Origin: Podarcis erhardii
Taxonomy: Eukaryota
Direction: 5' to 3' (one strand)
Assembly: GCA_964252035.1 (NCBI GenBank)
Contig: OZ176200.1
Length of the DNA: 64,000 bases
The translations under genes and the position numbers were made by a program. The notes under the pieces are model-generated. The model searched no databases and was not told the DNA's origin. It worked only from the letters and a program-made list of their open reading frames with translations. Numbering within the stretch: the first letter of the stretch is position 1; each line of letters opens with the position of its first letter. This document shows positions 6,455 through 13,508 of this stretch, in pieces.

Positions 6455-8047
6455 TATAGAAAATGGAGGCCCTCCCTACCAGATTCCACTTCCACATGCA
6501 TGTAGCTAGTCAACTGCAATAATGAATTGTTTGGGGGAAATGTCAACAGCTCTTTAATTTCCCTTCACACCAATGTGATTTGATATGGAAAAATTCCTTC
6601 CTATGTTCTCAAAGGAGAAATCTATATTTAGTGATTTAATAATCTTCACTGCGGCCTTCCACCTATAATCCCCTCAGATGAAAGGAGGATGAATCCAAAC
6701 AGCAGCCATGCAGTCTGAGAAATTAACTGCCTGTAGTTCCCTGAAGCAATTCTGTTATATCTTTAGGGAAGTCAACAAAGTACTTGAGGAAGCTTTCAGC
6801 AGTGGCAGTTCCCTTAGGCAAGGGGGGTGAACTTTATGCTACCTGACTTCTTCCACAGGGTTGAAGTTGTTGACGGTTCACAGATGCTAAGCTTCAAAGC
6901 CGTTTGCACCTTTAGCTGTTAGGGCAAGTTGCCATCCATTGGCCAGGATCCTTGGCTGTTCTAAATCTCCAGAGGAAGTACAGCAACTGAGCAGTTTTGT
7001 GTCTGGAGAATTTTCCGTATTCGTAAAGAGATTTTTCTCCTTCTTTTGGATCTCTTTGGGCTTTAAACCAAATTCACATAGCCTGCTGCTTCCTGATGTT
7101 TTTCTCCTTACTGTGGGCAACTAAAGTGATGATATAAGTTTATCCTTATCCCTCCCATTGCAAAGTGCTGGGATTCAATGTGTCAGATAATATTCTACTA
7201 ATTCAAAGCACTGCAGTACATTTGGTTATTGCAATAGCAGCAGTTTCTTCTTAGACAGGAGCTTCCCAGTGTTGTTGTAGCAGCAACACAGGATGTTAAA
7301 TGGGAAGTATCTTAACAGGATCCCCCAGATGTTGGGAGGGTTTTCACTTTTGATTGCCTAGTTTGGTGCAATGGTTGCTGTCCCATCTATGCCAATCCTG
7401 CCTCTCCATTTGGTCAGAAGCGACCATCATAGCAATTGACATACTCACGTTGTGGGATGCTAGTGATAATGTGCTGAATCAATGTGTCTGTTCATAGAAG
7501 CAGCATAATTGCTGGAGGAAGCAGCCTTTGGGAAATGCCTTCATGGGTGGATCTGCAAGCAGGCATCTGAACCTTGCTAATACAAGTAAGCAAGGTGGAC
7601 GGCCACCTGAAAGGCCATATAGAGATAAGCCTGATATCCAGTTTAAACCGTTCTTAAACCTGAGTACTGGTCTAAATGGAGCAGTTGTAAGGTGACCTCA
7701 CCTCCCCCACACCTCCAGTAGGATTACCAACTTCTTGATTAATTGGGGTTAGATGAAATAGTTTTCAGTTGAGTAAATGGTGCTGAACACATGGACAGAT
7801 TCTGCACAGCTCCATCAGACAATCACATCATTCCAGAGTGGAAAGTGTCAGGGAATTTGGATGGGACACAGTGAGAAATTGTTCTCTCACTTAATGTGTG
7901 ACCTTCTAGTAAATGGAAATCTTACTGCCTGCCTTAATGCTGCAAATTAATAGGAAGCAGCGCAGGAGAGTGTGGTCCAGTGATACAGCTCCACATGCAC
8001 ATGCAGGATTCTGCCTTTGTTTTCTACTGCAGGCAAAGTGTCATGTG

Positions 8048-9529: not shown

Positions 9530-9790
<261 letters not shown>

Positions 9791-10510
9791 TGATGGGAGG
9801 GCAGTGGTGGGAGGGAAATAGGACTGAACTGCCCTGGGATCAGGTTTTATTAAGGGGTGATATACAAATATCCTCAGCAAATATCCAAAACTAAGTTTTT
9901 ATTGCTTAGGCCATCAACAGTGAATCAGTAAAATGTGGGGCATGCCACTGAGTATAATGAGAACACAGCATAATGACACAATCAGTTACAATATACAACA
10001 TATACCTTAATAAATTTTAGGGATTCGGAGCCCTTTCAGCAGTTCTGTTAACTGAAGTCGTTCTTTCCCTGAGTAGCTCCAGGATATATTACATCACTGG
10101 GAAGGACCTCAGCCTTGTGAGCCAAATGATGAGTTGTTCTCTTTCCATTCTCCTGATGAGAGAGAGCCTGAAATTGTATCTTTAGATATCTGTATAGGGA
10201 AGAGGAGGCTGGTAAAACAATAGCTTGCGTTCAGCTTGTGAATTATTAAACTGGATAACTAATGCAAAGAAGGGAGAAGGATTAGTTGCCCCTTATGGTG
10301 TGTTTTTTCTATGACACTTTCTTTCTATTTCCACCCCAGTTAGAAGGTCTGGCAGTGTGCCAAAGCCCTTAAGCATTAAGAACTTGTGTTCTTGCCCCAA
10401 ACAACCTTACCTACCATTGTTGTGTTGTCTCATTTCCCCCCAAGTAAATTTCAGGACAAAATCTAGAATACTGGATCTTTTCTGTTGACAGGTGTGGAAC
10501 ATAGGGGGGA

Positions 10511-10512
<2 letters not shown>

Positions 10513-10560
<48 letters not shown>
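10513..10560. repeat. (GT)24 microsatellite
   Basis: Direct reading. Confidence 0.95.
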
Positions 10561-10562
<2 letters not shown>

Positions 10563-11076
10563 GTTGGGAGAGGGGATAGCTTAATGATACTCACTATTGC
10601 ATTAACAATGAATTCTAATAATGCAGGAACTGCTTAGCACAGAGGAGTTCAGTGGGAAATTTTTGCAACCACAGAATTAAACCACCAACGCTGTTTGTTT
10701 TCAAAAACTCCAATATAAATATCCTGTTAGACAGGACTATTGTGAATAACAACCACTCATTGCTGGGACTTAGTATCTCGCTCTGCTTCTGATTGCCCAT
10801 TTGCCTCTGAATCTTTTTGTATCTTACCAGTTTCCAGTTGTACTTCAAATCCTCTGTTACTAATGTGTTAAATTAGAAGGCTGCAGAAAGATTCTCTCAC
10901 TGCAGCACAATACTGGAATTTAGTGCCTCAGTTGCAACAGAGGCTATGTGAGCAAATATATTAGCTCAGGGGATTTACATGGGCTCCATCTTCTGATAAA
11001 ATAGGAGAAGTGCAGTGGAAGTAGTTTGGGGGAGAAGAAGTGAACAGACTGCATAGATCTCTGGGTAAATGCTTTG

Positions 11077-11078
<2 letters not shown>

Positions 11079-11122
<44 letters not shown>
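11079..11122. repeat. (AT)22 tract, left flank of the Penelope-like insertion
   Basis: Direct reading. Confidence 0.95.
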
Positions 11123-11124
<2 letters not shown>

Positions 11125-11206
11125 TTTCGTAGATTTTCACGGGTACAGGAATGCAGGTTTTGGTGTCCTCGGGTGTCTTCCCGTGTAAAAGTTGGGGTGT
11201 CTAGGC

Positions 11207-11240
11207 GACGTTTCGACGAGGTCTCACTCGTCATCTTCAG
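11207..11240 (-). ncRNA. Minimal type I hammerhead ribozyme motif, left pseudo-LTR
   Basis: Exact reverse complement of 12541-12574. Confidence 0.7.
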
Positions 11241-11828
11241 GCTGGTGCTTTCGGCTTCTTGTTACTGGAACAGAGCAGGATCTCAGTGTTTGAGTTCCTA
11301 TAAATACTGTAGAGGGGGTGTGGTGTATAGCCTCCAATGTTCTGGGCAGAGAGGAAGTTCCCAGGCTAGTGTGCCTTTTCTTCTTTTGTTCCTTAATTAC
11401 TTGAGAGATATCTTGAGTGATTTCTTGAGTGATATCCTGAGTACCACTTAGGTGGGTCATTAGGTGTGGATTAGTTGTTAAAGTCTTTGTGTCTTGACCT
11501 CTTGAACTTTGTGAAGAGTTTTCCTGAGAAGATGGCTGTACTGTACTTAGTTGTGCTCTGGCTTGGCTTCGTGTATAGGGGCGAGCTGTGGTTTTGTGGC
11601 TTGTGTCAGCCAGATCTGTGTAGGGATTGCAGGGGGGTGCAGCATCCGGAGGTGCCACCATGGATTGGCTACTGGATGGTGTCTGTAATTCATCTGTGGA
11701 GAGGGTCTGGGTTTGGGTCTGGTGTGGTTGATTGGTGTTGGCGTTCTGTGTGCCTCTGGATCTGGTGTCAGTTTTTGTGGGGAGGGCTAATTTCCTCTCT
11801 TTTCTAAACTTCCTCTCTTTTCCAACAC

Positions 11829-12557
11829 ATGAAAGAAACAGGACACGAAATTAATTTTGCAGATTCCAAATTGCTCTTTAACACGGAACATCACCACAAG
11901 AGAATAATCATGGAAGCCATCGAGATAGAGAAACACCCTCACAACATGAACAAGCGTGACGACACATCCCGCTTGCCAGACATCTGGAAATTAGCCCTCC
12001 CCACAAAAACTGACACCAGATCCAGAGGCACACAGAACGCCAACACCAATCAACCACACCAGACCCAAACCCAGACCCTCTCCACAGATGAATTACAGAC
12101 ACCATCCAGTAGCCAATCCATGGTGGCACCTCCGGATGCTGCACCCCCCTGCAATCCCTACACAGATCTGGCTGACACAAGCCACAAAACCACAGCTCGC
12201 CCCTATACACGAAGCCAAGCCAGAGCACAACTAAGTACAGTACAGCCATCTTCTCAGGAAAACTCTTCACAAAGTTCAAGAGGTCAAGACACAAAGACTT
12301 TAACAACTAATCCACACCTAATGACCCACCTAAGTGGTACTCAGGATATCACTCAAGAAATCACTCAAGATATCTCTCAAGTAATTAAGGAACAAAAGAA
12401 GAAAAGGCACACTAGCCTGGGAACTTCCTCTCTGCCCAGAACATTGGAGGCTATACACCACACCCCCTCTACAGTATTTATAGGAACTCAAACACTGAGA
12501 TCCTGCTCTGTTCCAGTAACAAGAAGCCGAAAGCACCAGCCTGAAGATGACGAGTGA
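11829..12557 (+). CDS. Truncated Penelope-like ORF: C-terminal half of a GIY-YIG endonuclease plus a long low-complexity tail
   Basis: (TSSLFQH)MKETGHEINF...KRIIMEAIEIEKHPHNMNKRDD...LPDIW matches the recalled PLE endonuclease pattern H-x(4)-GH...R-x(3)-EAIEI...N...W. There is no RT domain, so the copy is non-autonomous. Confidence 0.8.
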   Translation: MKETGHEINFADSKLLFNTEHHHKRIIMEAIEIEKHPHNMNKRDDTSRLPDIWKLALPTKTDTRSRGTQNANTNQPHQTQTQTLSTDELQTPSSSQSMVAPPDAAPPCNPYTDLADTSHKTTARPYTRSQARAQLSTVQPSSQENSSQSSRGQDTKTLTTNPHLMTHLSGTQDITQEITQDISQVIKEQKKKRHTSLGTSSLPRTLEAIHHTPSTVFIGTQTLRSCSVPVTRSRKHQPEDDE

Positions 12558-12574
12558 GACCTCGTCGAAACGTC
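12541..12574 (+). ncRNA. Minimal type I hammerhead ribozyme motif, right pseudo-LTR
   Basis: CUGAAGA (CUGANGA box), extra U, stem II GACGAG/CUCGUC with loop UGAGAC, GAAA box, palindromic ACGU as stem III, and a GUC cleavage triplet ending at 12574. Stem I is only about 2 bp next to the core. Confidence 0.7.
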
Positions 12575-12625
12575 GCCTAGACACCCCAACTTTTACACGG
12601 GAAGACACCCGAGGACACCAAAACC

Positions 12626-12628
<3 letters not shown>

Positions 12629-12662
<34 letters not shown>
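12629..12662. repeat. (AT)17 tract, right flank of the Penelope-like insertion
   Basis: Direct reading. Confidence 0.95.
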
Positions 12663-12664
<2 letters not shown>

Positions 12665-12972
12665 CAGTGGAGTGCACTGTGTGTTAAATCCTGTGATATG
12701 CTCAGAGAATATGGTGTTGTGACAGTCACATAAATATTTTACTTAGAGCTAAAATTCAACAGCACAACTTAACTGGATAAAGGCGGTTTCTAGTGACTTA
12801 TCAGAGGGCAGTACAACTGACCTTAAGCAAAGTTCAGTTCATTACATTTGTGGCTGGCCTATTCGCCCTCCTGTCAGAAGCAAGACATTTATATTATGTC
12901 ATTGTCTGTAACTTGCATGCTGCATTCATGTTTATTGCGGTAAATGACAACTCTGTCTTGATTCCTCTTCAG

Positions 12973-13144
12973 CTGCTCAGAAGAAGCTAATGGCCGCACA
13001 AGCTCAGTTAAACCCTTCCACTGGTCCTGGGGCAGCAGAGTCTGTTGTGGAGACACGGACGACAGCAATGCAAATCACAAGGGACTTGCTTAGGAGCAAA
13101 GGCATCGCAGGACTTTATAAGGGACTTGGCGCTACGTTGCTAAG
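12973..13144 (+). CDS. SLC25A22: SLC25A22 internal exon ([10 protein letters not shown]...[23 protein letters not shown])
   Basis: AG at 12971-12972, GT at 13145, 172 nt. Phase is compatible with both neighbouring exons. Carrier motif GIAGLYKG. Confidence 0.97.
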
Positions 13145-13508
13145 GTAGGGCACCCCTTTAACCCTCTGGAGGACCTAAAATCCAAATGATGCCCAGTAGT
13201 CTGGGGTAACAACAAGGAATGAATAGGAACACCTGTTCCCTGGGTATTGACTCAGTTAGGGATGGGGACAGAGTGGGTAAGGGAGGGAGATGGCGATACA
13301 CTGCACTGGAGTTTCATAGTACTAAATGAGAACAGTGTAGAAAGAGAAATACCTGATGCATTTGAAAACTATGGAAAGGGGAATCTTCTTTCTGTGCACA
13401 ACTAACCACCCCTTACAACTGGCATGAGGCATGAGGCAGCTTGGTATTAAAGGACTAAAGGAAAGAGCTCTTCCCTTGTCCCTCATGGTCTTGCTTCTCC
13501 TTCTGCAG

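What the first reader, a model, noticed from the sequence alone, without database searches (positions are those of the whole stretch)
11123..12630. Very young palindromic Penelope-like retroelement inside SLC25A22
Seen: two 645-bp arms (11151-11795 and 11986-12630) are reverse complements with no mismatch found in spot checks or in the translated frames, around a 190-bp spacer. The spacer and right arm encode a GIY-YIG C-terminus. Established: Penelope-like elements use RT plus GIY-YIG and often leave inverted pseudo-LTRs. Inference: identical arms and retained CpGs point to very recent transposition, so an active and possibly undescribed lizard PLE family should exist and the locus may be polymorphic.
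Basis: partly seen in the sequence, partly recalled or inferred. Interest (0 to 1): 0.8.

Follow-up and report, generated by a model that had tools for sequence, protein, structure and literature searches.

The report
Young palindromic Penelope-like retroelement insertion
A lizard "jumping gene" of the Penelope class recently landed in a TA-repeat inside an intron of the mitochondrial glutamate-carrier gene and was laid down as two mirror-image halves; this layout is a known signature of the class, so it is a clean textbook example, not a new kind of element.

Summary
Positions 11151-11795 and 11986-12630 are perfect reverse complements (645/645) around a 190-nt spacer.

The insert (11123-12630) is the 3' end of a Penelope-like element (PLE) laid down head-to-head:
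- an inverted 5'-truncated copy (11795 back to 11123);
- a 10-nt templated filler;
- a sense 5'-truncated copy (11806-12630).

It sits in a (TA)n microsatellite. It carries the 28-nt PLE "tail" on one arm only and a minimal hammerhead motif in each arm. It encodes the C-terminal half of a GIY-YIG endonuclease with an open frame to the native stop. Relatives of 800-850 aa carry RT in the middle and match this region at their C-terminus.

The family is highly repeated in four related lizard organisms, and other copies end at the same base next to (TA)n. The host is an intron of a mitochondrial carrier gene, whose only named relatives are glutamate carrier 1/SLC25A22.

All these features are published PLE hallmarks (Craig 2021; Frangieh 2024; Cervera 2014). 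This scan has already noted similar perfect PLE palindromes elsewhere in this genome.

Recent insertion is well supported. Polymorphism, an intact autonomous master copy and "undescribed family" could not be tested. Interest is low to moderate.

The parts
11079..11122 (.). (TA)22 microsatellite, left remnant of the insertion target
   Evidence: other copies of the family also abut (TA)n
11123..11150 (-). 28-nt PLE 'tail': extension of the element's 3' end, present on the inverted arm only
   Evidence: No partner beyond 12630. A similar sequence lies next to a (TA)n in the Phrynocephalus copy L002. It fits the roughly 30-40-bp one-sided tail described by Craig 2021 and Frangieh 2024
11151..11795 (-). 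Inverted 5'-truncated copy of the element's 3' end (left arm; 673 nt with the tail)
   Evidence: 645/645 reverse complement of 11986-12630
11207..11240 (-). Minimal hammerhead ribozyme motif of the inverted arm
   Evidence: The descriptor scan finds only this site and its twin in the 64 kb, and none in 200 shuffles
11796..11805 (.). 10-nt filler TCTCTTTTCT at the inner join. Its first 9 nt repeat 11814-11822, following a shared TTCC (13-mer at 11792-11804 = 11810-11822)
   Evidence: parental sequence differs upstream of 11806 (loose ends; L001)
11806..12630 (+). Sense 5'-truncated copy (825 nt) of the element's 3' end, in the same orientation as the host gene
   Evidence: Colinear with L001 from its base 587, 9/825 differences. 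Loose ends before 11806 carry the parental upstream sequence
11808..12557 (+). Open remnant of the element's ORF: C-terminal half of the GIY-YIG endonuclease (conserved H, H, R, E, N kept; GIY, YIG and upstream R/H lost by truncation), a lineage-specific tail of about 190 aa, and the native stop
12541..12574 (+). Minimal hammerhead motif: CUGAAGA, bulged U, 6-bp helix II closed by G10.1-C11.1, GAAA, palindromic C-G, UC. It overlaps the last codons (PEDDE) and the stop of the ORF
   Evidence: 34/34 identical in the agamid copy L002 while the flanks are 64-75% identical; architecture as in Cervera and de la Pena 2014
12629..12662 (.). (TA)17 microsatellite, right remnant of the target
9598..9716 (+). 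Host exon upstream (mitochondrial carrier; AG acceptor, GT donor)
   Evidence: Mito_carr 28.8 bits; splice sites read
12973..13144 (+). Host exon downstream. It joins the upstream exon in phase 1. The acceptor lies 342 nt from the element's end
   Evidence: Mito_carr 23.7 bits. The next exon's named relatives are glutamate carrier 1/SLC25A22

Best explanation
This is one recent retrotransposition event of a highly repeated lizard Penelope-like element with a Penelope/Poseidon-type endonuclease, into an intronic (TA)n microsatellite. The inferred mechanism has three steps. (1) The element's GIY-YIG endonuclease cut both strands of the TA tract. (2) Each exposed 3'-OH primed reverse transcription near the 3' end of element RNA. 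The minus-strand primer on the right started at the inner start site (...CCUGC/AU). The plus-strand primer on the left started 28 nt further downstream, which gives the one-sided tail. (3) The two cDNAs grew towards each other for 825 and 673 nt, stopped, and were joined through a 4-nt TTCC microhomology with a 9-nt templated filler. The result is a head-to-head pair of 5'-truncated copies: a perfect 645-bp inverted repeat with a 190-nt loop. Shown: the anatomy, the family membership, the shared termini and TA targets of other copies, and the near-uniformity of the family. Inferred: the two-sided priming, the order of events, and the end-joining step. The fragment is dead as an element, having no RT and only half an endonuclease.
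For: Perfect arms and asymmetric ends. Both flanks are (TA)n. Contigs of four runs show (TA)n directly before base 11151, so other copies end at the same base in TA repeats; L001 and L002 do the same. The tail is on one arm only and the inverted 5'-truncated copy is adjacent, exactly as drawn for PLEs by Craig et al. 2021 (PMC8557442). The Anolis PLE protein cleaves and extends both strands, prefers AT-rich DNA, and starts reverse transcription at two adjacent internal sites that define the tail (Frangieh et al. 2024, PMC11167929). The ORF remnant is 97% identical to P0001, which holds GIY...YIG with the C-x2-C between them. 800-850-aa relatives carry RVT_1 centrally and match at their C-terminus. 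A minimal hammerhead lies in each arm. On youth: there are 0/645 differences between the arms. The best-holding run has no position where 10% or more of family depth differs from this copy, whereas the family in three other organisms differs at 1-4 fixed positions. 1845 of 2421 contigs are at least 99% alike. The 249-codon frame is still open. Unique flanks are colinear with the host intron, and the flanking exons join in phase.
Against: No independent read or contig was shown to bridge the palindrome or either flank junction. All laid records are short-read contigs that stop in the (TA)n, and the best holder may be the sample the assembly came from. Identity of palindrome arms can be kept by gene conversion, so 0/645 is not a clean clock. 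Two-sided priming is inferred from one locus plus in vitro data from a different lizard family. No intact autonomous copy of this family was retrieved. The ORF remnant alone has no Pfam hit, and Rfam's hammerhead models do not score the motif.
Confidence: 0.8

Rival explanations
1. Two independent insertions of the same family, in opposite orientation, into the same (TA)n tract, which happen to lie head to head.
For: The family strongly targets (TA)n and is very abundant, so double hits on one microsatellite are conceivable. The two copies use different 3' termini, one with the tail and one without.
Against: No TA units lie between the two 5' ends. There is only a 10-nt filler that copies the neighbouring element sequence after a TTCC microhomology, which points to a direct join of two cDNA ends. 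The overlapping 645 nt are identical. Adjacent inverted 5'-truncated copies are a recurrent PLE layout.
Confidence: 0.07
2. An older insertion whose arms are kept identical by arm-to-arm gene conversion, so that it only looks very young.
For: Large palindromes are known to homogenise by intrachromosomal conversion (general knowledge). Presence or absence in the related organisms could not be read.
Against: Conversion between arms does not explain why the unpaired 180 nt and the arms both match the family's dominant sequence in the source organism at every position. The family in organisms A, B and D has 1-4 fixed differences. The truncated frame has no stop in 249 codons.
Confidence: 0.07
3. 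Assembly artefact: a palindrome created by a chimeric or hairpin long read, or by mis-joining copies of a repeat.
For: Perfect palindromes are a known artefact class, and PLE arrays are known to trouble assemblies. No independent bridging read was obtained.
Against: Library hairpin artefacts mirror whatever lies at the fold, including unique DNA. Here the mirrored part stops exactly at the element's two natural 3' termini. Both outer flanks are different unique sequences, colinear with one intron whose exons join in phase. The inner join has a microhomology filler, not an adapter or a blunt fold. Flank contigs of four runs run into (TA)n at both edges.
Confidence: 0.05

Closest known systems
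[quoted passage not shown] 2021, PMC8557442, Fig. 2)
   Same: Strong 5' truncation; an inverted 5'-truncated copy directly adjacent, which makes inverted repeats; a tail of roughly 30-40 bp at only one end; a hammerhead motif in the repeat; a microsatellite/AT-rich target; a GIY-YIG endonuclease with two Cys between GIY and YIG.
   Different: Here both copies are short 3' fragments (825 and 673 nt), so there is no full-length unit or direct pLTR. The tail is 28 nt, slightly under the quoted range.
PAc, the Poseidon element of Anolis carolinensis (Frangieh et al. 2024, PMC11167929)
   Same: A lizard PLE whose protein cuts and extends both DNA strands in vitro, prefers AT-rich sites, and starts reverse transcription at two adjacent internal RNA sites that bound the tail, inside an AC-rich region. 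This locus shows one arm starting at each of two sites 28 nt apart, in an AC-rich 3' region.
   Different: It is a different host family (lacertid-like, not anole), and the sequence relationship to PAc was not measured because no PAc sequence was on hand. Here the hammerhead overlaps the end of the ORF, which has an extra C-terminal tail of about 190 aa. In PAc the hammerhead is described at the pLTR-ORF junction near the start codon.
L1 twin priming (Ostertag and Kazazian 2001; recalled from general knowledge, not checked here)
   Same: Both ends of a staggered break prime reverse transcription, and the two cDNAs are joined by microhomology. This gives an inverted 5' part and a direct 3' part.
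   Different: In L1 the second primer anneals internally on the same RNA, so the two parts are different segments of the element. Here both arms start at the element's 3' end and duplicate the same 645 nt, producing a true palindrome.

Membership tests
Penelope-like elements (endonuclease-positive, C-terminal EN) | GIY-YIG endonuclease with the PLE-specific CCHH motif (two Cys between GIY and YIG) | tested here: met
   The window keeps only the C-terminal half, with invariant H, H, R, E, N aligned. The 97%-identical copy P0001/L001 reads GIYEIPCKVCPATYIGQT...EH...QH. PF01541 scores 20-25 bits in P0001, P0003 and P0005; only P0003 passes the cut-off.
Penelope-like elements (endonuclease-positive, C-terminal EN) | Reverse transcriptase upstream of the endonuclease in one ORF | tested here: inconclusive
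   RT is absent from this truncated copy. P0005 and L001 reach back into the RT end/thumb. Eight relatives of 679-853 aa (37-48% identical) carry RVT_1 centrally and match the query at their C-terminus. No full-length copy of this same family was retrieved, and PLE-type RT phylogeny was not done.
Penelope-like elements (endonuclease-positive, C-terminal EN) | Insertion layout: 5' truncation, adjacent inverted 5'-truncated copy, one-sided tail of about 30-40 bp | tested here: met
   against the description read. The tail is 28 nt.
Penelope-like elements (endonuclease-positive, C-terminal EN) | Hammerhead ribozyme motif in the terminal repeat | tested here: met
   The minimal-HHR descriptor has a bulge between positions 9 and 10.1, a G10.1-C11.1 pair, a 6-bp helix II and a palindromic 15.2-16.2. 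It matches once per arm and nowhere else in 64 kb, with 0 hits in 200 shuffles. The motif is 34/34 conserved in an agamid copy. Rfam models give no hit. Cleavage was not tested.
Penelope-like elements (endonuclease-positive, C-terminal EN) | AT-rich / microsatellite target preference | tested here: met
   (TA)n lies on both sides here, and at the ends of other copies in four runs, in L001 and in L002.
Penelope/Poseidon clade, as opposed to Neptune, Nematis and Hydra | CCHH present, and no CX2-5CxxC zinc-finger-like motif in the RT-EN linker | tested here: met
   The L001 translation has a single Cys in the 140 aa before GIY, and has C-x2-C inside the core. Criteria are from Craig 2021.
Penelope/Poseidon clade, as opposed to Neptune, Nematis and Hydra | RT groups with Penelope/Poseidon in a phylogeny | not tested
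   No RT sequence of this family and no reference set were on hand.

The most novel reading that the evidence does not exclude
The family is transposing now in this lizard lineage, and this particular insertion is a segregating allele. It places a 645-bp perfect double-stranded RNA hairpin, plus a sense hammerhead, in SLC25A22 pre-mRNA 342 nt upstream of a splice acceptor. That would make a natural vertebrate system for watching PLE transposition (both reverse-transcription start sites captured in one event) and its effect on a host gene.
Probability: 0.3. Interest if true: 0.45.

Novelty: new member of a known kind. Interest (0 to 1): 0.25.

Why it matters
The locus is a readable in vivo record of features that so far rest on comparative surveys and one in vitro study. 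It shows both DNA strands used as primers, two reverse-transcription start sites 28 nt apart used in a single event, and a microhomology join with a templated filler. It also shows that a Poseidon-type endonuclease without the linker zinc-finger still targets (TA)n tightly. The family is very abundant and nearly uniform in several related lizards, so it may be a useful vertebrate model of PLE activity. None of this changes what is known about the element class. For the host gene the practical point is a long perfect hairpin in an intron, which could matter for RNA editing, splicing or DNA stability, but none of these effects was tested.

Tried and rejected
- Pfam on the window's ORF alone gave no hit even at E 10. 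The GIY-YIG assignment therefore rests on homologues.
- Rfam at E up to 1 gave no hammerhead. The MIR2646, mir-297 and mir-1277 hits only reflect the long hairpin and the TA tracts, and I reject them.
- Read laying on four runs gave Logan short-read contigs only. They stop in the (TA)n, so they give no filled or empty-site call, no bridge across the palindrome and no polymorphism test.
- The Phrynocephalus locus L002 was fetched to reach the RT, but it is also a 5'-truncated copy.
- The big representative search found full-length RT+EN relatives only at 48% identity or less. It found no intact master copy of this family.
- Three literature searches found no dedicated description of a lacertid PLE family. 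One lacertid genome paper merely lists 'Penelope' among LINE types. This does not show the family is undescribed, since Repbase and Dfam are not on hand.
- A foldback DNA transposon or MITE was considered and rejected. The arms are the coding 3' end of a PLE ORF, and they end at that element's natural termini.
- A folding check of the 3' region gave no significant structure (z -0.86), so I make no claim about the 'AC-rich stem-loop' here.
- Host exons were searched one by one by reference.
The consensus lines printed by the alignment tool were not used.

Full report
**Observation.** The window holds a perfect inverted repeat. Arms 11151-11795 and 11986-12630 are 645 nt, 100% complementary, with 190 nt between them. 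The match stops sharply on all four sides. The insert is bracketed by (TA)n: 44 nt at 11079-11122 and 34 nt at 12629-12662. No other copy of the sequence occurs in the 64 kb.

**Anatomy.** Comparison with an independent copy refines the picture. That copy is L001, a 1436-nt Logan contig encoding P0001.
- The sense copy begins at 11806 and runs to 12630 (825 nt; 9 differences from L001).
- Loose contig ends in three of the four runs show the parental sequence continuing upstream of 11806. So 11806 is a 5' truncation point.
- The inverted copy runs from 11795 back to 11151 and then 28 nt further (11123-11150). The right arm has no counterpart for these 28 nt.
- L001 and the right arm both end at ...AAAACCTGC(AT) followed by (TA)n. 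The left arm reads on as ...CCTGCAT-TCCTGTACCCGTGAAAATCTACGAAAGC before its (TA)n.
- Between the two 5' ends lie 10 nt, TCTCTTTTCT. Together with the preceding TTCC they make a 13-mer (11792-11804) that is repeated at 11810-11822. This 13-mer occurs nowhere else in the window.

**What it encodes.** The frame 11808-12554 is open for 249 codons up to the native stop.
- On its own it has no Pfam hit.
- The word search found P0001 (97% identical, 368 aa), which extends upstream into ...GIYEIPCKVCPATYIGQTNRRI..EH.. It also found agamid (Phrynocephalus) proteins named GIY-YIG domain-containing proteins.
- PF01541 scores 20-25 bits in P0001, P0003 and P0005, and passes Pfam's cut-off in P0003.
- In the alignment the window retains the conserved H, H, R, E and N of the second half of the domain. 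It has lost GIY, YIG and the upstream R/H through truncation.
- The exhaustive representative search found 145 proteins at E up to 1e-30. Its long members (679-853 aa) match the query at their C-terminus, and all eight that I tested carry RVT_1 in the middle. That is the canonical C-terminal-endonuclease PLE architecture.
- The RT-EN linker of L001 has no CX2-5CxxC motif, while the C-x2-C inside the GIY-YIG core is present. By the criteria of Craig et al. 2021 this is the Penelope/Poseidon type. RT phylogeny was not done.

**Hammerhead.** I wrote a descriptor following Cervera and de la Pena 2014. It requires CUGANGA, an optional bulged base, a helix II of at least 4 bp closed by G10.1-C11.1, GAAA, a palindromic 15.2-16.2, and UH.
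- It hits only 12541-12574 (+) and its mirror 11207-11240 (-) in the whole window, and never in 200 shuffles.
- The motif has the published peculiarities of PLE mini-hammerheads: the bulged U, a 6-bp helix II, no helix III and a very short helix I.
- It is identical at 34/34 positions in the Phrynocephalus copy L002, within a 44-nt identical run. The neighbouring sequence is 64% identical upstream and 75% downstream.
- Rfam's models do not score it. Cleavage is untested.

**Family behaviour.** I laid the contigs of four public runs, from four coded organisms, on 10300-13400.
- The element bins carry summed word depths of about 5e4-9e5, against 3-110 on the flanks. Between 888 and 10155 contigs were laid per run. 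The tool warns that this is not a copy number, but the family is clearly highly repeated in all four organisms.
- In every run several contigs show (TA)n immediately before base 11151. Other copies therefore end at the same base inside TA repeats, as do L001 and L002.
- In the best-holding run (flanks identical; possibly the source sample), 1845 of 2421 contigs are at least 99% alike. No element position has another letter at 10% or more of depth.
- In the other organisms the family differs at one (11426) or four (11884, 12043, 12180, 12258) fixed positions. Their unique flanks differ from the window by roughly 0.6-2%.

**Age.**
- Zero differences in 645 paired sites puts a 95% upper bound of about 1-3 million years on the arms, for substitution rates of 0.8-2.4e-9 per site per year. 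The rates come from my own general knowledge and are approximate.
- Arm-to-arm gene conversion could fake this. It would not explain the match of the unpaired 180 nt to the species' dominant family sequence, or the open frame.
- The CpG argument is weak: 0.35-0.37 against 0.25.

**Host context.**
- Exons lie at 9598-9716 and 12973-13144 on the + strand, with AG/GT boundaries. They join in phase 1, and both hit Mito_carr.
- The next exon's named relatives are all mitochondrial glutamate carrier 1 / SLC25A22, or 18/22.
- The insert therefore lies in the 3256-nt intron 9717-12972. The sense copy has the gene's orientation, and the element ends 342 nt before the acceptor.
- I searched the exons one by one and did not build a joined model.

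**Mechanism.** The layout matches published PLE hallmarks point by point.
- Craig et al. 2021 describe an inverted 5'-truncated copy adjacent to the unit, a 30-40-bp tail at one end only, and a microsatellite bias.
- Frangieh et al. 2024 show that the Anolis Poseidon protein cleaves and extends both strands, prefers AT-rich DNA, and initiates reverse transcription at two adjacent internal sites whose interval is the tail.

The most economical reading is a single event in three steps. First, both strands of the TA tract were cut. Second, each 3'-OH primed cDNA synthesis on element RNA, one at each start site. Third, the two cDNA ends joined through TTCC microhomology with a 9-nt templated filler. 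The anatomy is shown. The priming and the joining are inferred.

**Rivals.**
- Two independent insertions (about 0.07). This is disfavoured by the absence of TA units between the copies and by the templated join.
- An old insertion homogenised by conversion (about 0.07).
- Mis-assembly (about 0.05). This is disfavoured because the mirrored part stops exactly at the element's two natural termini, the outer flanks are distinct unique sequences colinear with one intron, and the inner join is a microhomology filler.

No read-level bridge was obtained, however. All records were short-read contigs that break in the (TA)n.

**Earlier scan notes and verdict.** The scan's earlier notes list several other perfect PLE palindromes in this same genome, judged by their follow-ups to be clean examples of a known layout. 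My independent analysis reaches the same conclusion for this locus. It is a real and very probably young PLE insertion. It is a new copy, and perhaps a new family, of a known kind. Interest is low to moderate.

Noticed in passing
window 12535-12557: The ORF's last codons (P-E-D-D-E-stop) are encoded by the hammerhead core and helix II (CCUGAAGAUGACGAGUGA). The same C-terminal ...HQPEDDE is kept in diverged relatives (P0004, the L002 copy). The peptide end is therefore probably constrained by the ribozyme, not the other way round.
   Followed up: partly
window 11151-12630 (+), in intron 9717-12972: Transcribed with the host gene, the insert is predicted to fold into a complete 645-bp perfect RNA duplex (-1396 kcal/mol), 342 nt upstream of a splice acceptor. 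It is a possible substrate for editing or dicing and a possible fragile cruciform in DNA. No expression data were examined.
   Followed up: partly
protein P0002 (UniRef, Podarcis muralis, named translin-associated factor X): The last 105 residues or so of this gene model are 91-94% identical to the C-terminal tail of this PLE family's ORF. This is either an exonised PLE fragment or an annotation run-on in TSNAX. It also suggests the window comes from a close relative of Podarcis.
   Followed up: no
L002:4700-4820 and 6560-6920 (Phrynocephalus forsythii, GCA_029282475.1): An agamid relative of the family is also 5'-truncated and flanked by long (TA)n. Downstream of it lie an inverted tail-like segment and a second short 3'-end fragment between TA tracts. 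This is another complex PLE insertion in a microsatellite.
   Followed up: partly
family level (L001:43-1338): The family targets (TA)n tightly although its RT-EN linker lacks the CX2-5CxxC motif. That motif was hypothesised to mediate microsatellite targeting in Neptune and Naiad elements (Craig 2021).
   Followed up: partly
window 10501-10570: The read tool skipped this stretch as a repeat and contigs of all four runs break there. I did not look at what it is.
   Followed up: no
window 11744-12037 (-): There is an Rfam 'MIR2646' hit (52.8 bits against a gathering score of 245), and mir-297/mir-1277 hits on the TA tracts. They are artefacts of the long hairpin and the simple repeat, not microRNA genes.
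   Followed up: yes
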